Positions 28,281 through 57,801 of a stretch of 64,000 nt of DNA are shown here, one piece after another. Made by a program: the position numbers and the translations under genes. Numbering within the stretch: the stretch's first letter is position 1; each line of letters begins with the position of its first letter. Location: IMG/VR virus record IMGVR_UViG_3300024308_000018, positions 165,747 through 229,746 of that record. One strand, 5' to 3'. The notes beneath the pieces were generated by a model. It saw nothing but the letters and a program-made list of their open reading frames with translations. It was not told the DNA's origin and did no database searches.

Positions 28281-28283
28281 AAG

Positions 28284-28317
28284 AAAGGGGAGACACCGCA
28301 AAGTGTCTCCCCTTTTC
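28284..28317. terminator. Bidirectional terminator
   Basis: 13-bp perfect inverted repeat AAAGGGGAGACAC / GTGTCTCCCCTTT between convergent genes. Confidence 0.88.
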
Positions 28318-30237
28318 TTATTCTGCAATGCGTTGAACTTTGCAGTACAGCACAGGCGTCGGCTCGTTCGTGAGCGGCTGTGCGTTACGTACCGGATACA
28401 TGAACACCTTGCCTGAGTTGTTGTCGGTGGCGTAGATCTGGAACGTGCGGTGCTTCTGCGACGCGATGGTGTAGAGCGGAGCACCAATGACCGGAGGCTT
28501 CTCGCGCAACAGTCGGATACTCTCTTTCTCGTCGGCGCTCAGGGCCGGGAACTTGAAGTCGATCAGCGCCTTGGTCTGCGCCCACTTGGCGGAAACCTTG
28601 ACGTTGTTGACCCCAATGTTATGCAGCCACTGATACACTCGACGCACGGCCCCATACACATCATCACGACCTACGCGGCCGCCAACGATGTCGAATACCA
28701 GACCCTTGGTGGTCGGGCGCGGTTTCAGATGTCCGCTGAAGAAGCCTTCATTGAACAGCTTGGTGATCGCCAGCCGTGTTTCCGCAGGGTCGAAGTCGCT
28801 CCAACTGACGTTGATGTCGTCGGGGTCGATGTCCGTCCATGGCCGCTCTTCGCGCACGTCGTCTGACCCGATGGGCGACACGTAGGAAACCATGCGCACG
28901 AACGTTGCCTTCGACTTGATTTCCGCAGTAGACATGGCGACCGCGCGCTTGTTGATCTGCGTGACCAGCGGAGATTGCCGCACGATCTTGTAGAGTTCAA
29001 CCTTACCTGCTTTCGTCATGGAATCGCCAGCAGCCTGACGCAACGTGTCGAGCTGGCGGGTGAGTGCTGCGCGTGTCGGTGCGTACACCACCCAGCTGTC
29101 TTTCGCGTGCTGCTCATGCGGAGTAACAGCGAGGAAGCCGTAATCGGAATCCGCAATGGTCTTCGGCGACGGGATGGTCGTGGTACGTGGGCCGACGGTC
29201 GGGCTCGTTACCGGGACAGTCACGCGTGTGGTAGCTTTCTCGATCTCAGCCAACTGCTTTTCAGCACCCTGCTTACTGGTGTAGCCAAGCTCTTTCCACT
29301 GGGAGAGAGTACGGCCAGCTGCCAGCAATGCGCGGATGTCTTCGGCGTGTGCGGCCAACGCTGCCGCCACGTACTGCTGCTCGCGCGGCTTGGCAAGCAG
29401 CGCCATACCGATTTGCGCAGTCGTCATGTTCTTGTACGCTGGGCGCTTGTTGTTGCGCAGTGCATTTTCGATGGGGTCATCGGAAGCAACAGGGTGATAC
29501 ACGTTGCCCTTATTGTCGACCTCCAACTCGGTGCCCTTGTAGACGTTGCCGCCGATAAGCACGGTGAAGTTCGGGTCGCCGACGTACTTGGGATCAATGG
29601 GCCCGCCGTCGTACTGGTGCACGGTGTTGGGCTTCTTATCCTTCAGCTTTTCTTCAACCTGCTGCGCGATAGTCTGGACGGCCTTCGGCTTGAACGACGC
29701 CTTCAGTCGCGCGACCTTGGTCTTCGGCAGGTAGGTTTCCATCGGGGTTTTGAGATCGAAGCAGAAGTAATGGCGCTTGTTGCTGTCCATATACATCTTG
29801 ATCCCGGCAGCGAGGAACCACTTGTGAGTAGTGGTGTCGTTGATGTCCTCGGTGATCGTGCCGATCTCTGTGAAGTTGGCTCGGTTTACGCCTTTGCCTG
29901 TAGCGTACAACAGGTTGTCGAGATCCATCTTCTTGGGGAACTTGGTGCCCGCCAGAATCTGCATGATCTTCGCACGGTCGCTAACGTAGAAGAACTCGCG
30001 CTTACGCTCAATCTTCAACACGATGGCGACTTTACCACGGGCATTTGCTGCGGGCACCAACTCGTAGGCTTCACCCTTATCGACCGCTGCGTCCCAGTCG
30101 TCGTTACCGTCGATGTCTATGGACGCACTGCCCATATACTTCAAGCGAATCGGAGCCACGGCGGACTCCGAAGTCATCGGTTCAACGTTACTGAGGCTCT
30201 GCATGCGGACGCCAAAATTACGCTGGATCACATTCAC
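28318..30237 (-). CDS. Putative internal head (virion cargo) protein
   Basis: AGGAGG RBS with a GTG start. N-terminal SLS and SES motifs; basic; N-domain loosely resembles the 43204 protein. Confidence 0.6.
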   Translation of the reverse strand: MNVIQRNFGVRMQSLSNVEPMTSESAVAPIRLKYMGSASIDIDGNDDWDAAVDKGEAYELVPAANARGKVAIVLKIERKREFFYVSDRAKIMQILAGTKFPKKMDLDNLLYATGKGVNRANFTEIGTITEDINDTTTHKWFLAAGIKMYMDSNKRHYFCFDLKTPMETYLPKTKVARLKASFKPKAVQTIAQQVEEKLKDKKPNTVHQYDGGPIDPKYVGDPNFTVLIGGNVYKGTELEVDNKGNVYHPVASDDPIENALRNNKRPAYKNMTTAQIGMALLAKPREQQYVAAALAAHAEDIRALLAAGRTLSQWKELGYTSKQGAEKQLAEIEKATTRVTVPVTSPTVGPRTTTIPSPKTIADSDYGFLAVTPHEQHAKDSWVVYAPTRAALTRQLDTLRQAAGDSMTKAGKVELYKIVRQSPLVTQINKRAVAMSTAEIKSKATFVRMVSYVSPIGSDDVREERPWTDIDPDDINVSWSDFDPAETRLAITKLFNEGFFSGHLKPRPTTKGLVFDIVGGRVGRDDVYGAVRRVYQWLHNIGVNNVKVSAKWAQTKALIDFKFPALSADEKESIRLLREKPPVIGAPLYTIASQKHRTFQIYATDNNSGKVFMYPVRNAQPLTNEPTPVLYCKVQRIAE

Positions 30238-30880
30238 GGGGGCCTCCTACAGAAAGCTGTGCTTCACAGCACAGGTACGGCCAAAGTTCATGGTGGATCT
30301 GCTCGATTGTCTTGCCGACAACGTTGACAACCAGAACGTTTTGCTCGCGTGCTGCGGCCTGACGGTAGCTTGACATCAGCGCCTCATACTTGGAGCGTTC
30401 GGTGTAGCGCTTCTCGATAGCGTCGAGCTGCTGACCGTCCCCGGTACGCGCATTACGGCGTTCCAGATAGGTGTCGTAGTCGAGTTCGAGGAACACGTAC
30501 AGCGGGGTGATCGGAGCGGCTATCTTCTTGTAGCGCAGGAACATGTCACGCAGTACGTCGTCGTTGCCGCACTGATAGATGTCGGTGCTGGGCGAACCAC
30601 GGTCACCCAACACAACCTTGCCCTGCTCCAAAGCCGGAATGATCCGCTTGTGGAACAGATCAGCACGTGCCGCCATCATTGCAAACAGCTCGGCTTCCGG
30701 GCTTGGATCGTATTCACCGTGCAGCACGCTCGCACGCATCGCTTCAGCGAAAGGGGTGCCGCCCGGCTCACGGACGACCTCCACTTCCACACCGCGCGCT
30801 TGAAGCTGCTCTGCAATGAACGCAATCAGAGAGGACTTGCCAGCGAAGTCCGGGCCTTCAAGTACGATGTAACTATCCAT
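30218..30880 (-). CDS. tmk: Thymidylate kinase
   Basis: YIVLEGPDFAGKSS P-loop, REPGGT, ELFAMMAARA, VLGDR. Confidence 0.95.
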   Translation of the reverse strand: MDSYIVLEGPDFAGKSSLIAFIAEQLQARGVEVEVVREPGGTPFAEAMRASVLHGEYDPSPEAELFAMMAARADLFHKRIIPALEQGKVVLGDRGSPSTDIYQCGNDDVLRDMFLRYKKIAAPITPLYVFLELDYDTYLERRNARTGDGQQLDAIEKRYTERSKYEALMSSYRQAAAREQNVLVVNVVGKTIEQIHHELWPYLCCEAQLSVGGPRECDPA

Positions 30881-30889: not shown

Positions 30890-32113
30890 TTACTTGCCAG
30901 AGTACATTTTGACTTTGTTGCTGAACACGTCGGCGACCAAAGTATCGAACAGCGCACGCGCTTCGGCCTTGGCTGCCTTGAAGTCGCCGGAGTCCACAGC
31001 GGTGGAGAAGATGCGCTGCATATCGGCGGTGAACTTCGGCGGCACGCGGCACTGACGCTTGCCCAACTGCTTGGTGAAGTTCATCAGAGCGAACTGGGCA
31101 TTCTCTTTGGCCTTGCGACGCAGCTCAACCTTGGTCATTTCTTCCGGCTTGAGTCGGTTCATGACGCGCGCTTTGAAGTCAGCCTGAGTACCAGCCATGA
31201 CTTTCGCGAACTCAACGTAGCCGTAGGTCAGACCCAGCACGTTGTTCACGTAGTTCTTCACGGAGTCGATACCGCGCAGCCCTTCGATCTTGGTGGTTTC
31301 GGCCAGAGCTTCGTTGCCCTTCTGAACGGAGGTGATCACCCGGTTGTACGCGGCGCAGTGCTTGCGGATGTTCTCGATGGACTTGGCAGTCATGGCAGGA
31401 GCCTTGGTCAGCATGCCTTGGAACTGGTTACGCAACTTGGTAGCGGCCAGAATCTGGGCCTTCTGCTTCTCTTCCTTGGTAGCAGCCTTGGTGGTCGGCA
31501 CAACCTTGTCGGCCGGAGCTTTCACCGGAGCTTTCTTGCCATCGGCAACAGCTGCGTCTCTCTTTTCCATGATGGTGGTCAGGGCTTTGGTGACTGCATC
31601 CTTGCTGAGCAGGCGCGACTGGTTCGGATATTGAACGCTGTGCATACCAGCCCACTCTTCCACCGCTTTCTGGACTGCGGTCGCCATATTCTTGCCCTTG
31701 GCGAATCGGACTTTGTAGGACAGGCGATCAGCAATCTCTGCAATCTCACCCTTGGAGAACTTCTTGGCTTTAGCCTTGGTTCCATCGGGAGCAGAGAACC
31801 CAGCAGGCTGCCGACCGGACGGGGAGGTAGCGAGATCGCGCTTGGGGTTTCCAGTATTCACCTTGGGTTTGAATGCGGGTTTCTTGGTTTTCCCGTTGGC
31901 GTTGAGCAGGCTCGTAAGTCTACCAAGTTTCTCTTGCGCCTCCTTCTTGCTGGGGAAGCCCGCAGCTTTTATCTCGGCAACAGGGCCGATAGACAGATCG
32001 TTGAGGCGGCGAATAGTTGGCAGCAACGGGGCAGCCAGTTTGCTTCCGCCAATCAGGGCGTCAACGATTTCAGCCAAAGACTTCTTGGCAGATACCGACA
32101 GTTGAATTTCCAT
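30890..32113 (-). CDS. Lys/Ala-rich basic putative internal head protein
   Basis: Leader MEIQLSVSA, highly basic, high-expression codons. Confidence 0.6.
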   Translation of the reverse strand: MEIQLSVSAKKSLAEIVDALIGGSKLAAPLLPTIRRLNDLSIGPVAEIKAAGFPSKKEAQEKLGRLTSLLNANGKTKKPAFKPKVNTGNPKRDLATSPSGRQPAGFSAPDGTKAKAKKFSKGEIAEIADRLSYKVRFAKGKNMATAVQKAVEEWAGMHSVQYPNQSRLLSKDAVTKALTTIMEKRDAAVADGKKAPVKAPADKVVPTTKAATKEEKQKAQILAATKLRNQFQGMLTKAPAMTAKSIENIRKHCAAYNRVITSVQKGNEALAETTKIEGLRGIDSVKNYVNNVLGLTYGYVEFAKVMAGTQADFKARVMNRLKPEEMTKVELRRKAKENAQFALMNFTKQLGKRQCRVPPKFTADMQRIFSTAVDSGDFKAAKAEARALFDTLVADVFSNKVKMYSGK

Positions 32114-32127: not shown

Positions 32128-32847
32128 TTATTGAATCCAGATGTTGTTGAATGGGACTGTGTGCTTGACGATCTTGCCTTTGTCGTCAGTCGTGGTGATC
32201 AACGCTTTCTCGCTCGGCAGCAGAAACATGAGGCGTCCAATGTGGTCGAGGGTTCCCTCACTGAACTGAACATCCTGCCCGCGCAGTCGGCTGATCTGCC
32301 ACGCGGTCTTCGTAAACTTCACCGCGCCTTTCGCCCGTGCTTCACGTCCTACAAGGAATTGCAGGAAGTGCTTGCGGGCTTGCAACGCGTGGTCGTCCTG
32401 AACCCGAGTCACGTCAGTGTTGAGCATAGCGAATGCGGTGGCGTGTTCGATGGCCTTGAAGTTCAGAGCCTCAACTCGCGCACCGCTTGCCAGCCCGAGT
32501 TCCACAACGTAACGTCCCTTGGCAAACTTGTGGATGCCGATGGACGAGTTGTTCATGCGGTTAGTCCACACGATGGAAAACATATCGGAGCCTTCAAGAC
32601 GGGTGGTGATCGTGATAGGCCCGAACCGGGTGTGCTGGCTACTACGCGACGCCTGCTGCGCGTTGGATGCAGATTCAATCTCACCCAGCATGCAGGCTTC
32701 GGCCTCACGCTTGTCACGCAGCTTGCGCGCAGATTCAAACATCTCGCCAAACATGTTGTCGAAGATGTCGCCGAAACTTTCAGCGAAGGAGAGGCTGGCG
32801 AATTCTGATTCCGTTTTTACTTGATTCAATCCTAATGCAATGTTCAT
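32128..32847 (-). CDS. Putative internal head protein
   Basis: Leader MNIALGLN...ASLS. GGAGAG RBS and TAATG coupling. Confidence 0.6.
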   Translation of the reverse strand: MNIALGLNQVKTESEFASLSFAESFGDIFDNMFGEMFESARKLRDKREAEACMLGEIESASNAQQASRSSQHTRFGPITITTRLEGSDMFSIVWTNRMNNSSIGIHKFAKGRYVVELGLASGARVEALNFKAIEHATAFAMLNTDVTRVQDDHALQARKHFLQFLVGREARAKGAVKFTKTAWQISRLRGQDVQFSEGTLDHIGRLMFLLPSEKALITTTDDKGKIVKHTVPFNNIWIQ

Positions 32848-33383
32848 TAGTTAACTCTCCGTGCCCGAGACAAGCCAGAAATCCACGCGAGCTTGGTGAA
32901 CAACCAAATGCGTCGAGCAGGTGCCATTTTCCTTTTAGCCGCAGGCAGGACTTTGCGCACAGGGCCGCCATTCCTACAAACGATGATACCAGCGCCTGAC
33001 CCAGCCAACGCTTCCTTCAAGCGGTCAGCATGAGTGTCCCAAAGCGCGTCGCTCACTGCGAAGTAGAACTGGTTGCAGAACGGTAAATAGCGCTGCCATT
33101 TTTGGTCTGCCGCAAAATCCTGCCATCCACTTTTCACCTCGACTATCGTGACAGAGCGATCCATCTTCACACATACGACGTCAGCACGTAAATGCCCGCC
33201 CCTCTCGACCCCCACCTCAAAGTGCAGGCTATACATGAGCTTCGTGAAGTATGGAGACAGTGCCTGACGCAATAGCGGGGCAACTTGATTTCGACTGATC
33301 GACGTGAAGGTCGCGGGCCCCAGATTACCGAAGGCCCGCTGACTCGGTGTCTTACTCGTCGTCGGTTTCCTCGTACTTGGCAT
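32847..33383 (-). CDS. mmcB: MmcB-like PD-(D/E)XK nuclease
   Basis: FEV.....LRADVV......IVEVKS..QDF..DQKW..YLPFCNQFYFAV, the MmcB/DUF1052 pattern. The start is inferred from a GAGG RBS inside the end of the upstream gene. Confidence 0.8.
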   Translation of the reverse strand: MPSTRKPTTSKTPSQRAFGNLGPATFTSISRNQVAPLLRQALSPYFTKLMYSLHFEVGVERGGHLRADVVCVKMDRSVTIVEVKSGWQDFAADQKWQRYLPFCNQFYFAVSDALWDTHADRLKEALAGSGAGIIVCRNGGPVRKVLPAAKRKMAPARRIWLFTKLAWISGLSRARRVN

Positions 33384-33909
33384 AAGCATCCTCACGGATC
33401 GGTTCCCAAGTCTCGCCGCCGAAGACGAGGCGCACGCCACTGAACGCACCAGCATTCAGACCCTGATTGAGCAAATCCAAGTCCAGCTGGTCGGCAGGAA
33501 CTTTGATCGTCATGTGCGGCTCATACTCAGGGTAGCTGTGACGGTAGCCCATCTGACGCAGGTACTTGTGACGCGCGATCAGACCTTGACTATCCAGCTT
33601 CAGCACCAGCGTGTTCTCTTCGGGCCCGAAGAGCGCACCGCTATTCACGGTAGCCTCGATCTGAATCGGGGCCGCCGGATGGAACAGCACGGGGTTTTCG
33701 CGGTCGTACATCATTGTCACGTGCAGGTCTTTGGGGTCGAAGTCAGTCTTCAGACCGATCTTCTCCAACTCAGACATGACAAACCGCACGGTCTCCGGAG
33801 TGGGATACACAGCAGCGTAGCCAGCGGGGGTCGTGCGGTCGGGGTCGTTCTGGCGGCCACGGCGTCGGGTGGATTCCGAAACCATGTTGAGGCCGAGATT
33901 GATGTTCAT
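33352..33909 (-). CDS. acb1: Anti-CBASS nuclease Acb1-like 2H phosphoesterase with an N-terminal leader
   Basis: Two HxT motifs (LHVTMMYDR, PHMTI). TLVLKLDS..L..RH.Y.R..G..H.Y..Y.PH.T and E..EP match T4 gp57B/Acb1 as I recall it. Confidence 0.82.
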   Translation of the reverse strand: MNINLGLNMVSESTRRRGRQNDPDRTTPAGYAAVYPTPETVRFVMSELEKIGLKTDFDPKDLHVTMMYDRENPVLFHPAAPIQIEATVNSGALFGPEENTLVLKLDSQGLIARHKYLRQMGYRHSYPEYEPHMTIKVPADQLDLDLLNQGLNAGAFSGVRLVFGGETWEPIREDAYAKYEETDDE

Positions 33910-33919: not shown

Positions 33920-34312
33920 TTACAGGGCGTCCATCGGCATGCGCATCAGGACAACGCTATGTTGATAACTGAGAGGCACATTTGCCAACTTGGCGTCGTC
34001 GGAACGCACAGAAGTCACGCGCCCGATAGGGGAACCATGCGCAACACGATCAATGAGATACGACGTGACCACAGAATTGTCTACTGGGTCTTCCACCGCA
34101 AACCCGATGGGGTCTTTGGTGGTGAGCGACGGCGCGCCCAGCACAACGAAGTTGAGATCTTCCACGTGGTCGGGGTTCACTTTCTTCAGTGCTGCGCGAA
34201 TCGGGTTGGGGGCATTGGCGTATGCAGCTTTCCGAACACGGTCAAGGAACGTGATTACGGGGTCTGCGGACAGCGAAGCGTTAGCAACGCAAAGGTTGAG
34301 TTCAATGTTCAT
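33920..34312 (-). CDS. Putative internal head protein
   Basis: AGGAGG RBS and leader MNIELNL...ASLSA. Confidence 0.6.
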   Translation of the reverse strand: MNIELNLCVANASLSADPVITFLDRVRKAAYANAPNPIRAALKKVNPDHVEDLNFVVLGAPSLTTKDPIGFAVEDPVDNSVVTSYLIDRVAHGSPIGRVTSVRSDDAKLANVPLSYQHSVVLMRMPMDAL

Positions 34313-35134: not shown

Positions 35135-35932
35135 TTAGTTCAGGTTCACGTTCGAGCCGTTGACGAACGCTTCACCTTTTGCATCTACCTTGAAATCGCC
35201 GCCGACTTCGATGTCGTACTTGCCGTCAATCTTGTCCTTGCGGTTACCCTTCACATGCACGGTTTGGTGACCGCCAATGGTCGTGTGCTGCGAACCAACT
35301 TGGCGCCCCAGCAGACCCTTGAACGGGATGCGCCCCTGCGGATCACTCTTCAGGTACTTGGCGCTCATGTTCGGGTCGTTGAGAATGTAGGCCGGAACTT
35401 CGCCCTTGTCGCCAGTGACGATCAGCTGCTGGTTCCCAACGATAGTCTGGTTCATATCGCCGAACGTCACGAAGTTGTAGTCGCCGGGATTGATGAAGAA
35501 CACCTCGTTGGTCTGCGTGTCGACCAGTACCTGAAAACCGTTGGGGAAACGGAAGCCCAAGCGGTTCGGGTAGTTGACGTCGTACACCGGATCCTTCGAC
35601 AGCTTGTCGATTGGGGTAGCTGCCGCCCACGTCGCGACGTGGGGGTCTCCGGTCGGGAAGTAGAGTTCAACCTTGTTGCCGCGACGTGGGACACCGCCGA
35701 AGAAACTGGTCTTGCCGATTGCTCCCATCTTCTTTGCCATCTGGCCGAACGGGTGATTCCAGCCACGGGGGCGTGCCCACGGCAACTGATCATCCGGTAT
35801 GTCGTCCATAAGGCCAGCGACGCGTGCACGAATCTGCCCGAACTTACCGGGATCGTTCTCGTCCACGACAATCGCTTCATAGGGCTCGGTCTTGTTGAGC
35901 CCTTTTCCGTGCAGTGCGCTCTGCTCTCTCAT
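35135..35932 (-). CDS. Baseplate central spike (gp5/VgrG-like OB fold plus beta-helix)
   Basis: YEAIVVDENDP.KFGQIRARV......LPWARP, P.RGNKVELYF..GD, and C-terminal beta-helix repeats. Confidence 0.85.
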   Translation of the reverse strand: MREQSALHGKGLNKTEPYEAIVVDENDPGKFGQIRARVAGLMDDIPDDQLPWARPRGWNHPFGQMAKKMGAIGKTSFFGGVPRRGNKVELYFPTGDPHVATWAAATPIDKLSKDPVYDVNYPNRLGFRFPNGFQVLVDTQTNEVFFINPGDYNFVTFGDMNQTIVGNQQLIVTGDKGEVPAYILNDPNMSAKYLKSDPQGRIPFKGLLGRQVGSQHTTIGGHQTVHVKGNRKDKIDGKYDIEVGGDFKVDAKGEAFVNGSNVNLN

Positions 35933-38042: not shown

Positions 38043-38053
38043 AACAGACCTCT

Positions 38054-42695: not shown

Positions 42696-43207
42696 TATGT
42701 ACTCCAGATAAGACGACAAGCATCACACTTGAACTGAACGACCAGAGGCTCATTGGACGGTTGACGCGCAAGCGCCAGCCCGTCGAAAGACATAGGCCAG
42801 CAGTTGCGTACTTCAATCGTCACGACGAGTTGCCCTGTCGTATCGTACAGCCCACAGCTGATGTTCTTCTTGTAGGTGGACGGGAGACGGAAGGCACCAT
42901 TGTACGGATTCTGAATCAACTGCTGCCACGTATCGAAGTAGCGCAGAGCATGCAGTTTCGCAGTGGTTGCCGCCTCCATTGAGAATTGGCCGGGCCGAGT
43001 ACCGTTGGCGAAGTAGATTTCGCTGGATGCAATGTTCTTCGCGCGCTCTTGCAGCACGTTGAACGGAGGCGTCACAGCTTCAATCAATTCAATGGGGAGC
43101 TTGAGGCCGCCGATGTCGGGCAACGCCAGCACTTTCCATTTGTCTGATTGCCACGGCTCGTATTGACCTTCAGAGTGTTTTTCTAGTTGTGCCAGCGTAA
43201 CGGTCAT
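42695..43207 (-). CDS. Tail-tube-like paralogue (gp19/gp54-like)
   Basis: YFDTWQQLI...G.F....YKKNI...LYD.TG......CWP, parallel to the 43914 tube protein. Confidence 0.7.
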   Translation of the reverse strand: MTVTLAQLEKHSEGQYEPWQSDKWKVLALPDIGGLKLPIELIEAVTPPFNVLQERAKNIASSEIYFANGTRPGQFSMEAATTAKLHALRYFDTWQQLIQNPYNGAFRLPSTYKKNISCGLYDTTGQLVVTIEVRNCWPMSFDGLALARQPSNEPLVVQFKCDACRLIWST

Positions 43208-43869
43208 GAATCCACCTTAACCATTAACACCGCCCGCTCGGGCTGCGTCTTGGAAGTTGGCTGCTGCACAACGGCTCCGACTTCGTGGTTGGTGCCTGCC
43301 ATGGCGGCGAGCAGCAGTTTCTCCGCGTGCTTCTCCCACTGCTCAGCTTTCAACTTCGATTCCACGTAGGAGGAAGTCGCATCGTAGTAGAAGACTTTGC
43401 CGTCACCCATATCAGCGTTGCGCATGTAGGTAATACTGCGCGGCTTGGGGAACGCTTGCTTGCGAAGAGCAGTCAGGATGTCTTTGGCGTTGCCTACAGC
43501 TTTGGTTTTGGTATCGGGGGCCGGATCGGCTGGCGGCTGTGCCGTTGGGTCACGTGGAACGTTCGCGCCCTTGACCAGTCTGCTGTTGTTTACAGCTTTG
43601 CCCTTCACTCGTCCCTTGTAATACGTTGCACGGCTCATGAGGGAACGTGCGGTTTTCGCATCGCACTTGAACAGCTCAGTCGGCAGGTCTTCGTGTGCAA
43701 CGTAGAACACACCACGCGGCCCGATGAAGATACCGAAGCGTTCGCCCGCATCTATCTGAACTTCGTATTCCTTGTTTTCGAGATATACACCACGCGCCCC
43801 AGTGAACTTGAACCAATCGAATTCAGTGTACTGCGGCTTGGCGGCGGATAGGCTCAAATTTAAGAGCAT
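43204..43869 (-). CDS. Putative internal head protein
   Basis: GGAGG RBS and leader MLLNLSLSA. Confidence 0.55.
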   Translation of the reverse strand: MLLNLSLSAAKPQYTEFDWFKFTGARGVYLENKEYEVQIDAGERFGIFIGPRGVFYVAHEDLPTELFKCDAKTARSLMSRATYYKGRVKGKAVNNSRLVKGANVPRDPTAQPPADPAPDTKTKAVGNAKDILTALRKQAFPKPRSITYMRNADMGDGKVFYYDATSSYVESKLKAEQWEKHAEKLLLAAMAGTNHEVGAVVQQPTSKTQPERAVLMVKVDS

Positions 43870-44441: not shown

Positions 44442-45179
44442 TTACTTGGCCGGAGTAGCAGCGGCTTTCTTGGCGGCAGCCAGCTGGGTTTTGGTTGCGT
44501 GACGCAGAACCAGAACACCCGCACCCGGTACGTTGATGTAAACGGCGGGCATGCCACGCGCCGGAGTAGACTCGAACACGTTGGCGGGTTTGATCTTGGA
44601 GCCCGCAGCGCCGAGGATGGTGTTCACCACAAGGTCAGCGGACTTGCGGAAGTCTGCGACGTTGGCCGCAGTGTTCGCTTGGCTGATCTCGGTGGCGCGG
44701 CCCTTGGTCTTGTCCAGTCCGCCCATGTGGGTTTCGATGGCCTTGATCAGGTCACGCTGGATAGCGGCAGCTTCTTTGCCCAGAATGCGCACGTCGTAGA
44801 TCGGTGCGATGGTGGCGTAGGCGTCGGTCGCGGTCTTACGGCTCATGACACGGAAGGCACGCTTGCGCAGATAGGCCGGGTCGCCCTTCTTGGCTTTGAC
44901 CGCAGAGTAGTTCTCGGCCTTGGAGTGTGCCTTCTTGTTCACCACGTAGTAGCCAACAGGCTTCAGCGCTTTCTCGATCTGCTTCGGAGTCTTGGCACCG
45001 ATGCGAGCGATAACCTTGTCGGCTACCGCGTCACCCTTGGCGTGTGCCTTAGCGAAACGCTCGGCGGCGGCAACGATCTTCTTGCCAGCGGCTTCAGCCT
45101 TCTTGATGTTCAGGTGCTTGTCAGCATCCAGAAAGTCAGCGGCTGCGGAAACGGATACGGTCTTGATGTTCAGCTTCAT
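44442..45179 (-). CDS. Highly expressed Lys/Ala-rich basic protein (putative internal head protein)
   Basis: Leader MKLNIKTVSVSA, very basic, strong codon bias. Confidence 0.6.
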   Translation of the reverse strand: MKLNIKTVSVSAAADFLDADKHLNIKKAEAAGKKIVAAAERFAKAHAKGDAVADKVIARIGAKTPKQIEKALKPVGYYVVNKKAHSKAENYSAVKAKKGDPAYLRKRAFRVMSRKTATDAYATIAPIYDVRILGKEAAAIQRDLIKAIETHMGGLDKTKGRATEISQANTAANVADFRKSADLVVNTILGAAGSKIKPANVFESTPARGMPAVYINVPGAGVLVLRHATKTQLAAAKKAAATPAK

Positions 45180-48124: not shown

Positions 48125-48556
48125 CTAGTCGATATTGCTGATAGTCAGCTTGATCAGGGAACGTTGAACGTCGGAACTTTCTGATTCGAAAGAGTCGTCA
48201 GCTTCTTCGTCTTCGTCTTCGAAGTCGATTACGCCGAGATCAATTTGGTCATCGTCATCCGAGTCGTCATCCGCGACGCTCAAGATGTCTTCCAGAGGAT
48301 CGGACATCTTGCTGAGTCGGCCAGCACGCGACAGTTCGGAACTGAGGGAATCAATGACATCCCCCAATTCCGATTCCGGCGCAAGAATGGCGGAACTCAA
48401 ACTGCACGCGACTTCATTGTTATCCACCAAGGTGGCAATGAGTTCGGGTGCGTCATCGGCGTGAGCCGCTTGACTGAAGAGTTCCGCTGCATCCTGTACG
48501 CGACCGCTACGGAGCGCCGAGATTGACATTGCTATCAAACTGGCGCTCAGCTTCAT
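48125..48556 (-). CDS. Small acidic head-assembly protein rich in SxS motifs
   Basis: ATGA-coupled to the MCP. Contains SAS, SIS, SLS (x2) and SES, and an acidic C-terminus. Confidence 0.6.
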   Translation of the reverse strand: MKLSASLIAMSISALRSGRVQDAAELFSQAAHADDAPELIATLVDNNEVACSLSSAILAPESELGDVIDSLSSELSRAGRLSKMSDPLEDILSVADDDSDDDDQIDLGVIDFEDEDEEADDSFESESSDVQRSLIKLTISNID

Positions 48557-49653
48557 TGACGCTTAGCCAGAGCCAGACCTTGGGTGTTGGCAACAACCAT
48601 GGACAGGATTTCGCTGATCAGCCAGCCCTTGTCGGTGTTACCTTCGTTGGCGCCAGTGGTAGCTTCGCTGGTTGCGCCGCCGCGAGTGGTGTACGCGCCG
48701 AGGTATTCCGGAGTGGCGAAGGTAAACAGGGTGCCACGTTCCAGAACACGTTGGGTCGGATCACGGAAACCGTCGGTGATCAGATCCATGCCCAGCAGGG
48801 TAGCCAGACGGCCAGTGCTCAGCAGCTCGTAACGGGTAACCGGTTCCAGAGCTTCCATCCACACGGAGCCACCGATCATGTCAGTCCAGAAGTCGGAAGA
48901 CAGAACGGTGCCCGCGACCGGAATGTTCCAGCTGTCGATCTGGTCGCGCATGGCGGCCAAGTGACCCGGCAGCAGCTTGTCGTGCAGGTAGGTGATCGGG
49001 TTGCCACGACCAACGGCCTGATATACGGCGTCCATGAACAGACGGTCTTCTTTGACCACTACGGACTGGTGAGCGTCGCGCTCAGCACGGCCCATCAGGT
49101 CACCAGCGATCTGGTGCATGTCGATCACCGGAACGCGCACAGCGGACTTGACTTCGAACTCTTGCGGGTTGAAGACTTTGCCGCGCAGGATTTGGTAACC
49201 CAGATCGGACGGGCCAGTTGCGACCACGGCGTGGCAGACGTGTTGTTTCAGTTCGACACGCGCGATTTCGCCTTGACGCAGGGTGCTGCCTTGCAGCAGG
49301 TTACGCATCAGGCCGGAACGCTCGGCACGGTCTTCAACGCGTGCAACGATGCTGGAGCCCAGAGACGCCCACTTGGACGGATCGTTGGCAGCTTCCATGA
49401 ACACTTCGTTGCCCAAACGGATGCGGTCAGCGCTGGACATGGAAGCCTGCATGGAGCCGACTTGATCTTCTTGAACCAGAACGACGTCGCCGTTCTTCAT
49501 CATGTCCATGTAACGTTGGCCTTGGGCCAGCGCGTCTTTCTTGTTGATGGCGTTCAGGTCGCCGGATGCGGAGAACATCGGCAGGTCGGTAACGGGACGG
49601 CCATCGCGAGTAACGGCAACAACAGCGCCCTTGGCTTTTGCATATTGAGTCAT
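48553..49653 (-). CDS. Major capsid protein (HK97 fold)
   Basis: AGGAA RBS gives MTQYAK at 49653. Strongest codon bias in the window. Lies downstream of protease and scaffold. HK97-like pattern (VVVKEDRLF, TGRLATLLGMDLITD). Confidence 0.85.
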   Translation of the reverse strand: MTQYAKAKGAVVAVTRDGRPVTDLPMFSASGDLNAINKKDALAQGQRYMDMMKNGDVVLVQEDQVGSMQASMSSADRIRLGNEVFMEAANDPSKWASLGSSIVARVEDRAERSGLMRNLLQGSTLRQGEIARVELKQHVCHAVVATGPSDLGYQILRGKVFNPQEFEVKSAVRVPVIDMHQIAGDLMGRAERDAHQSVVVKEDRLFMDAVYQAVGRGNPITYLHDKLLPGHLAAMRDQIDSWNIPVAGTVLSSDFWTDMIGGSVWMEALEPVTRYELLSTGRLATLLGMDLITDGFRDPTQRVLERGTLFTFATPEYLGAYTTRGGATSEATTGANEGNTDKGWLISEILSMVVANTQGLALAKRQ

Positions 49654-49684
49654 GAGAAGGAATTCCTGTTCAAAGTGGTAGGTT

Positions 49685-49710
49685 ATGTGGGGGCGAACAT
49701 CGCGCCCCAC
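49685..49710 (-). promoter_or_regulatory. GC hairpin in the MCP 5' leader
   Basis: GTGGGGCG.../...CGCCCCCAC between the TAATTTG motif and the MCP RBS. No U-tract. Confidence 0.45.
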
Positions 49711-50519: not shown

Positions 50520-52817
50520 TTATTTCAGGCCGAGGGCCGCCATCTTCTGTTCCCATGCGAGGGCGTCAGAGGACTTGGAGGCGATCTTGTCTTCAGGCTC
50601 TTGCGCAGGCTTGCGCACGACCTTACCGATTTCGGTAGCGCCGTTGGCAGACACGGAGGCAACGTTGATCTCTTCGATGGCACGGCTTACTTCGTTGTAG
50701 CCTTCGACAGACATTGCGCTCAGGGACTGTGCACGGGAGTAGACGGAAGCCATGAGTTCGGCACCCTGTTCGGCGAAGGCCGAGGATACCATCTCACGGG
50801 CGCTGCTCAGGCTCATGCCACCAGCAACCATCTTGTTCACCAGCGCGGACGCAACAGCGTTGTCATCCTGCTTCCAGAAGCCGCGAGTCAGACCGACAAA
50901 TGCGGTGCTGACGCTTGCTTGGTAGCGTTCGGTGGTATCGGCAACGATGGTGTTGATTTCGCTTTGCAGACGGTCGGCACGCTCGTCAGCGGACTTGCTT
51001 GCACGTTGTTGCAGAACGTTGCTGACGCTGACGTTGAATTCCACCGGAGTGAAGCCCAAGTCGGTCAGGGCCTGCTCCAGACCGTTCTCGCGGGCCGAAG
51101 CACTGAGTACGTTAGGCAGAGTACCGTTGCGGAACAGCAGCTTGGCCTTGTCTTCGTCACCCAGCGCAGTAGACAGAGCGGTCAGGTTCAGGGAACCCAG
51201 CGGCAGGTTGTCGTAGATGGCGTGATAGCGGCTCTTACCGTCGAACACACAGGACAGAGAGTCGAGGTTGAATTCCGCATCAGCGACCAAGGCTTCCGCC
51301 GCGCTGATAGAAATTACCGAACTCTCGGATTCCATGTCACCATCTTCGTCCTCGAAGTCCAGCTCGGAAAGCTCGTCGTCGGTCAACATGGTGTCGGGAT
51401 CTTCGCCATCATCATCACCTTCGTCGCCGGAGGTGGATTCCAGAGAGAAGTCGCCAGTGGCTTCGAAATCGGACTCTTCGTCCTCTTCCTCGTCCTCTTC
51501 GTCTTCTTCGTCTTCTTCGTCTTCGTCGTCGAATTCAGGCATGTCGTCACCTTCGTCTTCGTCGTCGAAGTCGTCACCGGACAGGCTGGCTTCGCCATCG
51601 TCGCCCATGTCTTCGTCGTCGTCGAGTTCGAGGTCTTCCTCTTCCTCGTCGTCGAACTCTTCTTCCTCACCGGAAGCAGACAGGAGGTCTTCGTCTTCCG
51701 CATCCAGCTCGGCCAGATCGGATTCCAGATCGTCGAGGGAAGACTCGTCGCCAACGGTGTCGGCGGCGGGCAGGTCGGCCAGATCTTCTTCGCTCGGTTC
51801 TACCAGCGGAGCGTCGCACTCGGAGCAGAAGTTGGCATCAGCAGAGCTGCACGCCATGAAACCGCAACCGTCGTGGCACTTGAACAGGTGAATGTTCAGA
51901 GCGTCGTGGGCGAGTTCAGCACCAGTGCCAGACAGAGAATCCATCACGCTGCTGGTAACGTTGTTACCGGTGTACGGGTTGAACGCGCACGCAGAGTTGG
52001 AGATGAAGTTCTCGTCGGTGTTCTTGTGATCGAAGTGGCTTGCGTTCGGCGCGCCGTTGATCAGAAGGTCGCGCAGCCCGTTAAGGGCACCGGACACTGA
52101 CGGAGCGAATACGTGCAAACGCTGATCAATTTTTCCAATTTTCTTGATCATGTTCTCGGGTTCCTCAAGGGGAGCGTTACAGTGAGCGCAGAAAACGATG
52201 TCCGCCGAAGTAGACAACGTTACAGGGTGGCTGCAACCAGCAGCGCACTTGAATTTGTGAAACACGCCGCTGAATTCAGCAACGTTGGAGCAGCTTCGTA
52301 CCGACTCTTGACCGCTATACGGATCGTAGTTCAACGTTGCGAGTTCCCCCGACAACGATGGCACGGTGCCGGAGCGCAAGGCACGGGCATAAGCAGCGGC
52401 TTGCTCTTCGGTTCCGCAGAACAGAGGGTCGCTACCTTGCAGCAGGGCGTCAGACTCGGAGCCGAAAACGAGGTCGTGAATATCTTCCTCGCTTGCGGTG
52501 AGTGCTGCGGAGCATGAAGGGCAACGTTGCAACTGGGATTCAGACAGGATGAAGGATTGGCAGCCATCCAGACACACGGTCAGGTTAGCTTCCGCTTCCG
52601 CACTGGTAGAGGCGAATTCCGTGCCCTCTACCCCATCAAAATCATGCACTGTGCCGTAACCGCAAGGGTCATAGGCAATGCCGTTAGTTGCGAACACGGC
52701 ACCGGATTCCGATGCCATGAAACGCGCGTTCTTCCCTGTAGCAACGTCCGAAAACGCTGCTACAACTCCCGCCTTGCTGTTAGCTGCCACGACTATGCCT
52801 TTGTAGAGCTTAGACAT
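50520..52817 (-). CDS. Prohead core/scaffold protein with Cys-rich ribbons, an acidic tract and a C-terminal coiled coil
   Basis: Position upstream of the MCP. Three C...C-x(12-16)-C..C modules, a D/E tract at about 51350-51800, and about 25 SxS motifs. Confidence 0.7.
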   Translation of the reverse strand: MSKLYKGIVVAANSKAGVVAAFSDVATGKNARFMASESGAVFATNGIAYDPCGYGTVHDFDGVEGTEFASTSAEAEANLTVCLDGCQSFILSESQLQRCPSCSAALTASEEDIHDLVFGSESDALLQGSDPLFCGTEEQAAAYARALRSGTVPSLSGELATLNYDPYSGQESVRSCSNVAEFSGVFHKFKCAAGCSHPVTLSTSADIVFCAHCNAPLEEPENMIKKIGKIDQRLHVFAPSVSGALNGLRDLLINGAPNASHFDHKNTDENFISNSACAFNPYTGNNVTSSVMDSLSGTGAELAHDALNIHLFKCHDGCGFMACSSADANFCSECDAPLVEPSEEDLADLPAADTVGDESSLDDLESDLAELDAEDEDLLSASGEEEEFDDEEEEDLELDDDEDMGDDGEASLSGDDFDDEDEGDDMPEFDDEDEEDEEDEEDEEEDEESDFEATGDFSLESTSGDEGDDDGEDPDTMLTDDELSELDFEDEDGDMESESSVISISAAEALVADAEFNLDSLSCVFDGKSRYHAIYDNLPLGSLNLTALSTALGDEDKAKLLFRNGTLPNVLSASARENGLEQALTDLGFTPVEFNVSVSNVLQQRASKSADERADRLQSEINTIVADTTERYQASVSTAFVGLTRGFWKQDDNAVASALVNKMVAGGMSLSSAREMVSSAFAEQGAELMASVYSRAQSLSAMSVEGYNEVSRAIEEINVASVSANGATEIGKVVRKPAQEPEDKIASKSSDALAWEQKMAALGLK

Positions 52818-57008: not shown

Positions 57009-57799
57009 TACCAACGTTCCTTATTGCGAGGATCCATTACGGATTCTGGGTCGGGAGACGCGCACACGAATGCTGGATTGCGCACGGCACTGGTCTCGAA
57101 ACCTTCGAGCACGTGGCACTGGCGATAAGCGAGACGGCCATCGGGTCGACGCATTACGCGGTTGCCGACGTGTCCGCACAGCCGCTTGCTACTGCCAGTG
57201 AAGGTTTCGCCGCACACCGAGCAGGTATACGCTTTGTACCACGTGCCCTTGGAGTAGGTGTTGTGCTTACCGGACAGAATGTCACGGCACAACTCGGGCT
57301 CAAGGTTGCGGTCGTAGGCCAGCAGCAAAATCAGACGACCGTGCGCTTTGTGGAAACCTTGCAGCTTCGACAGTTGGGCGTCGAAGATTGCGCCACGTGC
57401 GATGCGGTGGTTCTGGTTGTTGTGCTCGATGAAGGTGGGCTTACCCTTGAAGGTCTTGTACGCCAGCTGCCCGAATTCCGGACGGAAGGTCAGCCAGTCT
57501 TTGAGACCGAACGCGTCGCCGTTGGTATTGGGGATCCCCGACACGTTGACGACTGTAGGATGCAGCACGTAGTCGCGGATGTCGCGGCTGATGTTGTAGT
57601 GCTCGGCAGCAGCGGGCAGCCAAGTGTTCACGTCGAGGTTAACGGATTCGCGAACACCCATGCTTTCGCCGCGAACGGAGATTGACTTCGACTGGCGGGA
57701 GGCTTGCAGCTTGTGCATGTCGAGGCCGCGCGGAATCGAGACCCCAACGTCGAAGGATACGGAACGGAACGCTCCCTTGGATACATCAAATTCGCTCAT
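57008..57799 (-). CDS. Prohead maturation protease (serine, assemblin/HK97-like, with a Cys/His Zn-type insert)
   Basis: GKPTFIEH (catalytic His), TYSKG (Ser), CSVC...CGH, GFETSAVRNPAF. GGAG RBS gives start 57799. Confidence 0.78.
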   Translation of the reverse strand: MSEFDVSKGAFRSVSFDVGVSIPRGLDMHKLQASRQSKSISVRGESMGVRESVNLDVNTWLPAAAEHYNISRDIRDYVLHPTVVNVSGIPNTNGDAFGLKDWLTFRPEFGQLAYKTFKGKPTFIEHNNQNHRIARGAIFDAQLSKLQGFHKAHGRLILLLAYDRNLEPELCRDILSGKHNTYSKGTWYKAYTCSVCGETFTGSSKRLCGHVGNRVMRRPDGRLAYRQCHVLEGFETSAVRNPAFVCASPDPESVMDPRNKERW

Positions 57800-57801
57800 T
57801 G

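What the first reader, a model, noticed from the sequence alone, without database searches (positions are those of the whole stretch)
33352..33909. Acb1-like anti-CBASS nuclease carrying the same cleavable leader as putative capsid-cargo proteins
Seen: a 2H phosphoesterase with both HxT motifs, preceded by an extra ~24-aa N-terminus MNINLGLNMVSES-TRRR. This is almost the same leader as its unrelated neighbours (MNIALGLN...SLS at 32847; MNIELNL...SLS at 34312). Known: T4 Acb1/gp57B degrades CBASS cyclic-nucleotide signals, and T4 internal proteins enter heads via a short protease-removed capsid-targeting sequence. Inference: this phage may package Acb1 in the head and inject it with the DNA, disarming CBASS before phage gene expression starts.
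Basis: partly seen in the sequence, partly recalled or inferred. Interest (0 to 1): 0.85.

Follow-up and report, generated by a model that had tools for sequence, protein, structure and literature searches.

The report
Anti-CBASS nuclease with capsid-loading leader
An uncultured jumbo phage encodes an Acb1-type enzyme (the kind that destroys the alarm nucleotides of bacterial CBASS immunity) behind a short N-terminal tag that it shares with unrelated neighbour genes and that ends in the same Ser-x-Ser motif that recurs in the phage's head-scaffold and capsid proteins, so the enzyme is probably loaded into the capsid, trimmed, and delivered with the DNA, though none of this has been shown experimentally.

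Summary
The gene at 33352-33909 (-) encodes a 185-aa Acb1-family 2H phosphoesterase: Pfam PF23474 at 65 bits against a cut-off of 27, both H-x-T motifs, and solved Acb1 structures as its best fold matches. It carries about 30 extra N-terminal residues: a 13-residue leader and a basic linker. The leader is real. At least seven unrelated proteins in the window start M-x-(I/L)-x-(L/I)... and end in Ser-x-Ser. Codon usage differs between leaders, so conservation is at the protein level. The architecture persists in at least 8 related metagenomic lineages.

New here: Ser-x-Ser followed by a small residue is the most over-represented conserved motif in the acidic scaffold-like protein encoded near the head protease (19 conserved columns; no other pair exceeds 5). 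It is also conserved in the major capsid protein's N-terminal region. I therefore read it as the prohead-protease site.

Two further facts bear on the reading. The Acb1 of Erwinia phage Yoloswag, a cultured relative, has no leader and lies in another module. In other phages, Acb1 domains are fused to DarA, portal and MuF head proteins.

Packaging, cleavage, ejection and substrate are all inferred. The closest analogues are T4's internal proteins and the packaged 2H domains predicted by Iyer et al. 2017. I rate it a new variant of a known kind.

The parts
33352..33909 (-). Acb1-family 2H phosphoesterase precursor, 185 aa
   Evidence: ORF. Pfam PF23474 65.4 bits, residues 31-174. PDB 7t26 Acb1 at E 2.5e-11 by profile. 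Foldseek top hits are 7t26/7t27 and 9q2g/9q2y.
33871..33909 (-). Leader, residues 1-13: alternating hydrophobic start, ending S11-E-S13
   Evidence: Conserved in 8 database homologues; S11 and S13 are invariant. pLDDT is below 50. The same architecture occurs on unrelated neighbours.
33820..33870 (-). Basic, Pro-containing linker, residues 14-30; would be the N-terminus of the mature protein
   Evidence: 88% mean identity across homologues, higher than the enzyme domain at 72%. Absent from Yoloswag Acb1 and from solved Acb1 structures.
33715..33723 (-). First catalytic H-x-T motif (H63, T65)
   Evidence: Invariant. Aligns with the H-x-T of Acb1 7t26 and 9q2g.
33508..33516 (-). Second catalytic H-x-T motif (H132, T134)
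   Evidence: Invariant. Aligns with the second motif of solved Acb1.
33920..34312 (-). 130-aa protein of unknown function with the same kind of leader (residues 1-15, ending S-L-S)
   Evidence: AF2 pLDDT 82 with residues 1-14 disordered. No fold match in PDB or BFVD.
32128..32847 (-). 239-aa protein of unknown function with leader (S-L-S at residues 18-20)
   Evidence: No Pfam, PHROG or NCBIfam hit.
30890..32113 (-). 407-aa Lys/Ala-rich basic protein (pI 10.1) with a short leader ending S-V-S at residues 6-8
   Evidence: The leader is conserved in L009, L010, L003 and L002.
28318..30237 (-). 639-aa protein with a longer N-terminal segment ending in a conserved (M)-V/T-S-E-S followed by Ala, at about residues 20-27
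   Evidence: Homologous to Yoloswag gp113. The last gene before the terminator hairpin.
32847..33392 (-). MmcB-like PD-(D/E)xK nuclease lying between leader genes. It has no leader. The start is uncertain (Met at 33392 or 33386) and overlaps the 3' end of the Acb1 gene.
   Evidence: Pfam PF06319 at 4.4e-15. Conserved neighbour in all related loci.
57008..57829 (-). Head maturation protease, the candidate enzyme that removes the leaders
   Evidence: phrog_18299 at 3.1e-90. 48% identical to Yoloswag gp142, annotated as head maturation protease. It has its own conserved S-x-S at residues 23-25.
50520..52817 (-). 765-aa acidic scaffold-like protein carrying about 20 positionally conserved S-x-S sites
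   Evidence: 10 S-[EL]-S against 2.0 expected; none of 2000 shuffles reached it. 19 conserved S-x-S columns against at most 5 for any other residue pair. The enrichment persists in homologues down to about 25-35% identity. The PaBG homologue gp82 lies two genes upstream of the capsid gene gp80, with gp81 between them.
48553..49653 (-). Major capsid protein with conserved S-x-S near the N-terminus (residues 28-30; a second site at 71-73)
   Evidence: 47% identical to the Yoloswag major head protein and 38% to PaBG gp80. The first S-x-S aligns in all three.
48125..48556 (-). 143-aa acidic protein next to the capsid gene, with a leader-like start, S-I-S at residues 11-13 and three further S-[EL]-S
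   Evidence: The Yoloswag counterpart gp137 has 7 S-x-S.
43204..43869 (-). 221-aa KMPT-N-domain protein in the tail module with an 8-residue leader ending S-L-S
   Evidence: Pfam PF20294 at 2.6e-12, starting at residue 17. The leader and S-x-S are conserved in L009 and in Yoloswag gp132.
44442..45179 (-). 245-aa protein between the sheath and tube genes with an 11-residue leader ending S-V-S
35135..35932 (-). gp5-like baseplate spike, at the upstream end of the gene array that contains the Acb1 gene
   Evidence: phrog_430 at 3.7e-20. Synteny hub-spike-...-Acb1-MmcB-...-Tmk in all related loci.
28283..28316 (.). 14-bp-stem hairpin at the end of the long minus-strand array, a likely bidirectional terminator
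   Evidence: No terminator-like site above chance lies between the baseplate genes and this point.

Best explanation
The gene encodes the precursor of an Acb1-type cyclic-oligonucleotide phosphodiesterase that is made together with the virion proteins.

(1) The first ~10 residues form a disordered stretch with hydrophobic residues at positions 3, 5 and 7. They act as an address tag that brings the precursor into the assembling prohead.

(2) The phage's head maturation protease (57008-57829) cuts at or next to the S11-E-S13 motif. The same Ser-x-Ser-small motif is where it would chop the acidic scaffold-like protein and trim the capsid protein.

(3) The 172-residue mature enzyme (19.6 kDa, with a new basic N-terminus) stays in the DNA-filled head.

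(4) It enters the next host cell with the genome, so CBASS second messengers can be hydrolysed before any phage gene is expressed.

The same tag loads several unrelated proteins, so it behaves like an independently evolved counterpart of the T4 capsid-targeting sequence.

Shown: family membership and catalytic motifs; modular, conserved leaders; the shared Ser-x-Ser motif and its enrichment in head proteins; leaderless orthologues elsewhere.

Inferred: head targeting, cleavage, retention, ejection and substrate.
For: Enzyme. Pfam Acb1 is above its cut-off. Both H-x-T motifs are invariant. Profile hits fall on solved Acb1. The AF2 model's best structural matches are Acb1 structures.

Leader.
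- It is shared by at least 7 unrelated proteins in the window, P about 4e-6.
- It is kept, with different residues, in relatives at 94, 77, 73, 55% identity and lower.
- Leader, S-x-S and linker are as conserved as the enzyme domain or more so.
- It is disordered in two models.

Cleavage-site inference.
- S-x-S is conserved at 19 columns of the scaffold-like protein; no other pair exceeds 5, and other Ser-Ser spacings give 0-1.
- Enrichment is 4-7-fold across homologues, including Dickeya phage JA13.
- The extended context (F/M/V/L two residues before the first Ser; A/G/S/T after the second in 83% of sites) matches the leader junctions.
- S-x-S is conserved in the capsid protein N-region of the window phage, Yoloswag and PaBG and in the protease N-terminus.
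- PaBG virion proteins are known to be proteolytically processed (PMC7412058).
- In P0066 and P0068, which sit at the same syntenic position, an unrelated 150-aa domain is joined to Acb1 through a conserved S-E/T-S.

Contrast. Yoloswag Acb1 (156 aa) has no leader and lies among replication genes. Most of the 150 best family representatives are 140-175 aa without an extension.

Convergence. Acb1 domains are fused to DarA_N, Phage_portal_3 and Phage_Mu_F, and the solved Pam3 portal 8hds carries one at residues 484-614.

Gene context. The gene sits in a tightly packed, co-oriented array with the baseplate genes, with no terminator before 28283-28316.

Precedents. The T4 capsid-targeting sequence and its internal proteins (PMC7411985, PMC3012670).
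Against: - There is no experimental evidence for this phage or any close relative. It is known only from metagenomes.
- The specificity of this clade's prohead protease is unpublished as far as I could find. Ser-x-Ser could mark something other than cleavage.
- The protease has no sequence match to a solved prohead protease. Its assignment rests on a PHROG family name, a RefSeq annotation and synteny.
- PaBG's scaffold-like homologue has only 7 S-x-S, and PaBG lacks the second capsid-protein site.
- Two leader-bearing proteins are encoded in the tail module.
- Mature Acb1 is acidic (pI 5.05). From my own recollection, not checked here, T4 internal proteins are basic.
- Expression timing is unknown.
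- CBASS is generally thought to fire late in infection. The advantage of pre-loading is therefore not self-evident.
Confidence: 0.58

Rival explanations
1. The leader is an uncleaved docking strand that attaches cargo to a tail or baseplate component rather than to the prohead core. The closest analogy is effectors riding on a spike. Acb1 would still be virion-borne, but by another route, and Ser-x-Ser would not be a protease site on these proteins.
For: The Acb1 cluster lies directly downstream of the hub and spike genes in every lineage. Two proteins with the same leader are encoded between the sheath and tube genes. The alternating hydrophobic pattern fits a beta-strand that could add onto a partner.
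Against: The junction motif is the one enriched in the scaffold-like protein and present in the capsid protein and the protease, all of which are head components. In P0066 and P0068 the same motif sits between two domains, which makes sense for processing but not for docking. Gene position does not dictate location in the virion.
Confidence: 0.14
2. The tagged proteins enter proheads only as transient core or scaffold accessories, or the leader is a regulatory pro-sequence. Under this reading Acb1 is not delivered to the next cell. It acts late in the producing cell, or is released from the prohead after cleavage.
For: Scaffold components are cleaved and expelled in T4-like systems (PMC7411985). 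The mature enzyme is acidic, and, from my own recollection, not checked here, T4 internal proteins are basic. CBASS signalling is often triggered late, when a cytosolic late-expressed enzyme would be sufficient.
Against: A cytosolic role needs no leader. Yoloswag, the cultured relative whose gene was read directly, does without one. The conserved basic linker that would become the new N-terminus suggests the mature form has a function of its own. The recurrent fusions of Acb1 to retained head proteins (portal, DarA, MuF) point to delivery.
Confidence: 0.12
3. The enzyme is a 2H phosphoesterase with a different target: 2',3'-cyclic phosphate RNA ends, 2'-5' oligoadenylate-like signals, or cyclic oligoadenylates of type III CRISPR. 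The anti-CBASS label would then be wrong, whether or not the protein is packaged.
For: The 2H superfamily covers all these reactions. Iyer et al. 2017 considered both an RNase role and a nucleotide-degrading role for phage 2H domains (PMC5512222). Identity to characterised Acb1 is only 19-24%. The PHROG name for the family is 'RNA ligase'.
Against: The best sequence and structure matches are specifically Acb1, not LigT, CPDase or Usb1. The Pfam Acb1 score is far above its cut-off, while the LigT-type models fall below theirs. No RNA ligase partner gene is nearby.
Confidence: 0.18
4. The shared N-termini are a chance resemblance or an artefact of start-codon choice or DNA duplication.
For: The leaders are short, and Met-Asn/Lys-Ile starts are common in well-expressed genes.
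Against: P is about 4e-6 in the window. Every leader ATG has its own Shine-Dalgarno sequence, and codons differ between leaders. Independent gene calls in at least 8 lineages keep the leader and the two serines while other residues change.
Confidence: 0.01

Closest known systems
Acb1 (T4 gene 57B product; phage FBB1 Acb1, PDB 7t26/7t27; Burkholderia phage BCSR5 Acb1, PDB 9q2g/9q2y)
   Same: Same Pfam family (PF23474), the same two H-x-T/S catalytic motifs, and the same 2H fold as best structural match.
   Different: The characterised Acb1 proteins matched here are chains of 137-165 residues in the PDB listings, and the alignments show no leader on them. This protein has a 13-residue leader and a 17-residue basic linker in front of the domain, and it lies in a structural-gene array. 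Identity is 19-24%. Activity is untested.
T4 internal proteins (IPI, IPII, IPIII) and Alt, with their capsid-targeting sequence removed by the prohead protease gp21
   Same: A short N-terminal propeptide shared by otherwise unrelated, fast-evolving proteins encoded side by side. In T4 it binds the prohead core, is cut off by the head protease, and the cargo is ejected with the DNA. Some of that cargo is anti-defence (PMC7411985, PMC3012670).
   Different: There is no sequence relation to the T4 tag. The putative site is Ser-x-Ser followed by a small residue, whereas the SPN3US site ends in Glu (A-x-E) and is described there as reminiscent of the T4 gp21 site. Packaging and cleavage are not demonstrated here. 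The cargo would be an anti-CBASS enzyme, which is not known among T4 internal proteins.
Virion-packaged 'polyvalent' proteins with 2H phosphoesterase domains fused to MuF or portal (Iyer, Burroughs, Anand, de Souza, Aravind 2017, PMC5512222)
   Same: The idea that phage 2H domains are carried in the capsid and may degrade defence-related nucleotides. I found such fusions again for Acb1-family domains: DarA_N, Phage_portal_3, Phage_Mu_F and the Pam3 portal 8hds.
   Different: Here the domain is not fused to a structural protein. It stands alone behind a small, presumably removable tag, which is a different loading route and releases a free enzyme.
Giant-phage head proteolysis (the SPN3US A-x-E site; phiKZ, as I recall it, is similar)
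   Same: A jumbo myovirus in which many head and ejection proteins carry N-terminal propeptides ending at one short consensus, and a scaffold or inner-body protein carries many such sites (PMC7411985).
   Different: The consensus has Ser, not Glu, at the last position. The propeptides on the cargo are much shorter (8-20 residues, against about 110-130 for the SPN3US propeptides cited). The clade is the PaBG/Lu11/Yoloswag group (PMC7412058), not the phiKZ-like phages.
ICP3 Gp15 ejectosome protein that inhibits the CBASS effector CapV (bioRxiv 10.1101/2025.07.23.666291)
   Same: A virion-delivered protein that counteracts CBASS.
   Different: Gp15 is an essential DNA-ejection protein that binds the effector stoichiometrically and does not degrade cGAMP. 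The protein here is an accessory enzyme predicted to degrade the signal.

Membership tests
Acb1 (anti-CBASS 2H phosphoesterase, PF23474) | Sequence match to the family model above the curated threshold | tested here: met
   65.4 bits against a cut-off of 27, E 5.9e-18, residues 31-174 on model positions 4-140 of 144.
Acb1 (anti-CBASS 2H phosphoesterase, PF23474) | Two catalytic H-x-T/S motifs | tested here: met
   H63-V-T65 and H132-M-T134 are invariant in 8 homologues and align with both motifs of 7t26 and 9q2g.
Acb1 (anti-CBASS 2H phosphoesterase, PF23474) | 2H fold closest to solved Acb1 | tested here: met
   AF2 model at pLDDT 72.9. The Foldseek top 5 are all Acb1 entries (7t26 E 2.6e-5, TM 0.67 on the target). 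LigT, CPDase and Usb1 rank lower. The model quality is moderate.
Acb1 (anti-CBASS 2H phosphoesterase, PF23474) | Hydrolysis of CD-NTase products (3'3'-cGAMP, cA3 and others) and rescue of phage from CBASS | not testable with these tools
   This needs an enzyme assay and plating on a laboratory strain carrying CBASS.
Capsid-targeting-sequence cargo (T4 internal-protein type) | A short N-terminal propeptide shared by otherwise unrelated proteins | tested here: met
   Seven proteins in the window. Their mature parts are unrelated (BLASTP E > 0.1). The leaders are conserved across lineages.
Capsid-targeting-sequence cargo (T4 internal-protein type) | The propeptide ends at the consensus site of the phage's own prohead protease | tested here: inconclusive
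   The junction motif Ser-x-Ser-small equals the motif conserved at 19 columns of the scaffold-like protein and in the capsid protein and protease N-regions. The protease's specificity has not been measured.
Capsid-targeting-sequence cargo (T4 internal-protein type) | Homology to the T4 tag and cleavage after Glu | tested here: not met
   Several leaders contain no Glu near the junction (S-L-S, S-Q-S, S-N-S, S-V-S). This is an analogue, not a member of the T4 family.
Capsid-targeting-sequence cargo (T4 internal-protein type) | The mature protein is present in DNA-filled heads and ejected into the host | not testable with these tools
   This needs virion proteomics and infection experiments. 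The phage is uncultured.
Polyvalent or structural-protein-fused 2H domains (Iyer et al. 2017) | 2H domain in one polypeptide with MuF, portal, DarA or other effector domains | tested here: not met
   The window protein is a single domain plus leader. Fusions exist in other family members, and a two-domain version sits at the same locus in L022-L024.
Sec, Tat or lipoprotein signal peptide | Positively charged n-region, uninterrupted hydrophobic core, A-x-A or lipobox | tested here: not met
   Read directly from the sequences. The leaders are 8-20 residues with alternating, not contiguous, hydrophobic residues, and have no lipobox Cys. No dedicated predictor was available.

The most novel reading that the evidence does not exclude
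The PaBG/Yoloswag-related jumbo phages may have evolved, independently of T4, a portable address label: M-x-hydrophobic-x-hydrophobic, ending in Ser-x-Ser. A prohead protease of unreported specificity, with Ser at both key positions, would cut it. With this label they would load a changeable arsenal into the capsid. That arsenal includes a free anti-CBASS nuclease, proteins of unknown fold, multi-domain precursors that are cut apart at Ser-x-Ser, and possibly a DNA methylase. The arsenal would be fired into the host ahead of gene expression. Any protein behind this label would then be a candidate injected counter-defence factor.
Probability: 0.45. Interest if true: 0.72.

Novelty: new variant of a known kind. 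Interest (0 to 1): 0.62.

Why it matters
The characterised Acb1 proteins compared here are leaderless, free-standing enzymes, which I take to be made after infection starts. A pre-loaded, injected Acb1 would show that phages can neutralise nucleotide-signalling immunity from the first second of infection. It would extend the T4 internal-protein paradigm from anti-restriction to anti-CBASS.

There is a practical gain as well. The leader plus Ser-x-Ser rule gives a sequence-only way to pick out candidate injected proteins in a large, poorly known group of jumbo phages. It also predicts the cleavage specificity of their head protease, which can be tested directly by mass spectrometry on cultured members (Yoloswag, Dickeya JA11/AD1, PaBG). 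Finally, it offers a candidate tag for loading foreign proteins into these capsids, as the T4 tag does for T4.

Tried and rejected
- Megablast of the region against GenBank phages found nothing. Only protein-level relatives exist.
- I looked for published protease specificity or virion N-termini in this clade. The PaBG proteome comes from gel bands only and gives no cleavage sites. Searches on Yoloswag and Y3 found nothing usable.
- The protease gave no meaningful PDB hit by sequence or by a 2-sequence profile. The only matches were to its zinc-ribbon-like insert. Its fold was not modelled because the two structure jobs went to Acb1 and the 130-aa neighbour.
- The 130-aa neighbour gave a confident model but no fold match in PDB or BFVD. 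I found no Pfam, PHROG or NCBIfam family for the 130-, 239-, 407- or 263-aa proteins, and none in Pfam or NCBIfam for the 639-aa protein, whose only hit is phrog_32352 of unknown function. The idea that the neighbours are known anti-defence proteins therefore could not be supported.
- The N-domain of the two-domain Acb1 proteins P0066 and P0068 is not a diverged copy of the 130-aa family (hhalign probability 0.1).
- The 639-aa protein is unrelated to PaBG gp84.
- Sigma-70 promoter and terminator scans inside the array were at chance level.
- I rejected a DNA-level repeat, a Sec-type signal peptide and a misplaced start codon as explanations of the leader.
I repeated it without that row.
- Literature searches found no report of leader-mediated packaging of Acb1.
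Full report
**What is there.** The window is the last 64 kb of a 229.7-kb viral contig, IMGVR_UViG_3300024308_000018. It belongs to a jumbo myovirus. Its baseplate hub is about 35% identical to those of Erwinia phage Yoloswag and the Dickeya JA/AD1 phages. That places it in or near the PaBG/Lu11/Yoloswag group described in PMC7412058.

On the minus strand a tightly packed array runs as follows:
- gp25-like protein (37776-38087)
- hub (35929-37767)
- gp5-like spike (35135-35932)
- 263-aa protein
- 130-aa protein (33920-34312)
- the finding (33352-33909)
- MmcB-like nuclease
- 239-aa protein (32128-32847)
- 407-aa protein (30890-32113)
- thymidylate kinase
- 639-aa protein

Gaps between these genes are 0-20 nt. 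Nothing terminator-like above chance occurs until a 14-bp-stem hairpin at 28283-28316.

**The enzyme.** The 185-aa product matches Pfam Acb1 (PF23474) over residues 31-174 at 65.4 bits, against a cut-off of 27. The generic LigT-type models fall below their cut-offs. A profile of the protein and its homologues hits solved Acb1 (7t26, E 2.5e-11) and the Acb1 of Burkholderia phage BCSR5 (9q2g/9q2y), and both H-x-T motifs align. H63, T65, H132 and T134 are invariant. An AlphaFold2 model (pLDDT 72.9) has Acb1 entries as its five best PDB matches. Residues 1-25 have pLDDT below 50. No second copy lies in the window. Membership in the Acb1 family is therefore well supported. Substrate and phenotype are inferred from the family.

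**The leader.** In front of the domain lie about 30 residues: a 13-residue leader ending S-E-S, then a basic, Pro-containing linker.

Four further proteins in the window have the same architecture, with Met, hydrophobic residues at positions 3 and 5 (usually 7 too), and an end in Ser-x-Ser followed by a small residue:
- the 407-aa protein
- a 221-aa KMPT-N-domain protein (43204-43869)
- a 245-aa protein (44442-45179)
- a 143-aa acidic protein beside the capsid gene (48125-48556)

A fixed pattern fits 4 of 60 true N-termini against 0.18% of background positions (P about 4e-6). The mature parts are unrelated to one another. Each leader has its own ribosome-binding site, and synonymous codons differ between leaders, so the resemblance is selected at the protein level.

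**Conservation of the leader.** In relatives at 94% (L002), 77% (L009), 73% (L003), 55% (L012) identity and lower (L018, L020), the same gene families keep a leader. Its residues change, but the pattern and the two serines remain. Within the Acb1 family the Ser-x-Ser (96%) and the linker (88%) are more conserved than the catalytic domain (72%), and the first ten leader residues (75%) are about as conserved as it.

**The link to the head protease (new here).** The window also holds the head module:
- head maturation protease (57008-57829; phrog_18299, 3.1e-90; 48% identical to Yoloswag gp142)
- a 1383-aa protein
- a 765-aa acidic protein (50520-52817)
- a 256-aa ORF at 49736-50506 that occupies the position of PaBG gp81; no homology test was run
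- the major capsid protein (48553-49653; 47% identical to the Yoloswag major head protein)

The 765-aa protein has 10 S-[E/L]-S against 2.0 expected, and none of 2000 shuffles reached that number. In an alignment of eight homologues down to 43% identity, Ser-x-Ser is conserved at 19 columns, and at 14 of these the middle residue varies. The next most frequent residue pair reaches 5 columns, and Ser-Ser spacings of 1, 3 and 4 give 1, 0 and 0. One of the 19 columns lies inside a Cys-x-x-Cys motif and need not be a site. The enrichment persists in homologues at about 25-35% identity, including Dickeya phage JA13. The Yoloswag homologue has 27 Ser-x-Ser.

The extended context of these sites matches the leader junctions. 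F, M, V or L sits two residues before the first Ser. L, E, C or V sits in the middle. A, G, S or T follows the second Ser in 83% of sites.

The motif also appears in other head proteins:
- The capsid protein has a Ser-x-Ser that aligns in the window phage, Yoloswag and PaBG.
- The protease has a conserved one at residues 23-25.
- The 423-aa protein upstream of the protease has one at residues 18-20.
- The PaBG homologue of the 765-aa protein (gp82) lies two genes upstream of the capsid gene gp80, with gp81 between them.
- PaBG virion proteins are reported to be proteolytically processed.

By analogy with the many A-x-E sites of SPN3US, and, as I recall it, the S/A/G-x-E sites of phiKZ head proteins, I read Ser-x-Ser-small as this clade's prohead-protease site. 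I cannot say where in the motif the cut falls.

**Further support from relatives.**
- Yoloswag's Acb1 homologue is 156 aa, has no leader, and lies among replication genes.
- An exhaustive profile search found 1646 family members. Most of the 150 best representatives are 140-175 aa without an extension.
- The closest hits are the exceptions. P0063, P0064, P0106 and P0193 begin with a leader ending in Ser-x-Ser. P0063 sits at the same syntenic position.
- P0066 and P0068, also at that position, consist of a leader, an unrelated ~150-aa domain, a conserved S-E/T-S junction and Acb1. They look like precursors meant to be cut apart.

**Convergent evidence that Acb1 domains travel in virions.** Family members are fused to DarA_N/DarA_C, Phage_portal_3 and Phage_Mu_F. 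The solved portal of cyanophage Pam3 (8hds) carries an Acb1-like domain with both catalytic motifs at residues 484-614. Iyer et al. 2017 had already noted 2H domains fused to MuF and portal, and proposed that they are packaged and might degrade defence nucleotides. A virion ejection protein that blocks CBASS by another mechanism has been reported.

**Mechanism proposed.**
- Late synthesis together with the structural proteins.
- The leader targets the precursor to the prohead core.
- The head protease removes the leader at Ser-x-Ser.
- The 19.6-kDa enzyme stays in the head and is ejected with the DNA.
- Cyclic-oligonucleotide signals are hydrolysed from the onset of infection.

Only the anatomy is shown. 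Each functional step is inferred.

**Weak points.**
- There is no proteomic or biochemical evidence.
- The protease is assigned from a family name and synteny only.
- PaBG has fewer sites.
- Two leader proteins are encoded in the tail module.
- The mature enzyme is acidic.
- Expression timing is unknown.

**Comparison and novelty.** This protein works like a T4 internal protein with its capsid-targeting sequence, but it is not a member of that family. The tag is unrelated and Glu is not required at the site. It is a member of the Acb1 family. It differs from the polyvalent 2H fusions in being a free domain behind a small tag. I found no paper that describes leader-mediated packaging of Acb1. 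I therefore rate it a new variant of a known kind, with moderate to high interest. The predicted Ser-x-Ser specificity and the list of tagged proteins can be tested directly in cultured relatives.

Noticed in passing
window 50520-52817 (-), and homologues P0008-P0062: A 765-aa acidic protein with Cys-x-x-Cys pairs, annotated 'ATPase' in RefSeq relatives. No Pfam domain supports that name. It carries about 20 positionally conserved Ser-x-Ser motifs and looks like a multiply cleaved scaffold or inner-core protein.
   Followed up: yes
PDB 8hds chain A residues 484-614; P0129, P0102, P0105, P0136: The solved portal protein of cyanophage Pam3 ends in an Acb1-like domain with both catalytic motifs. 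Other Acb1-family domains are fused to portal, DarA and MuF head proteins, and one (P0089) to a GNAT acetyltransferase.
   Followed up: partly
L002 13802-15934 (94% relative of the window phage): An N6/N4 DNA methylase (PF01555, 3.3e-42) is inserted between the 239-aa and 407-aa family genes. It reads in frame, without a stop, into the leader of the 407-aa family gene. The product could be a methylase-leader-cargo polyprotein, or the two could be translated separately.
   Followed up: partly
window 33920-34312 (-): The 130-aa neighbour gives a confident model (pLDDT 82; three helices plus a beta-sheet domain) with no structural neighbour in PDB or BFVD. It precedes Acb1 in nearly every lineage, so the two may work together.
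   Followed up: partly
window 43204-43869 (-) and 44442-45179 (-): Two leader-bearing proteins are encoded inside the tail module, between the sheath and tube genes. One has a KMPT-N domain (Pfam describes it as the 'KTSC and Metallopeptidase N-terminal fusion domain'). Yoloswag gp132 keeps the leader and Ser-x-Ser.
   Followed up: partly
window 57008-57829 (-), about residues 192-231: The head maturation protease carries a Cys-x-x-Cys ... Cys-x-His insert that resembles a zinc finger. This insert was the only thing that matched PDB sequences. It is conserved in Yoloswag gp142.
   Followed up: no
window 32847-33392 (-); L009 10549-11070; L012 1172-1687; L007 14299-14787: The MmcB-like nuclease has no leader, but in relatives it begins with an Arg-rich stretch that resembles the basic stretch exposed on Acb1 after the putative cut. 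Its start overlaps the 3' end of the Acb1 gene. Its stop overlaps the start of the 239-aa gene (TAATG).
   Followed up: no
window 48523-50467 (+): The longest ORFs here are plus-strand shadows. The real genes are the minus-strand capsid gene (48553-49653) and a 256-aa ORF (49736-50506) at the position of PaBG gp81; no homology test was run on it. A naive longest-ORF caller would miss the capsid gene.
   Followed up: yes
L009 16490-18326 versus window 25879-27195: In a 77% relative the thymidylate synthase gene call is shorter (296 aa, against 438 aa in the window). It is followed by a GIY-YIG/I-TevI-like homing endonuclease gene. This arrangement is reminiscent of the T4 td intron.
   Followed up: no
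window 30218-30880, 33352-33909, 35135-35932: Acb1 lies between a nucleotide kinase gene and the baseplate spike gene. From memory, and not checked here, T4 gene 57B (acb1) also lies next to gene 1 (dNMP kinase) and near the baseplate genes. The neighbourhood may therefore be old.
   Followed up: no
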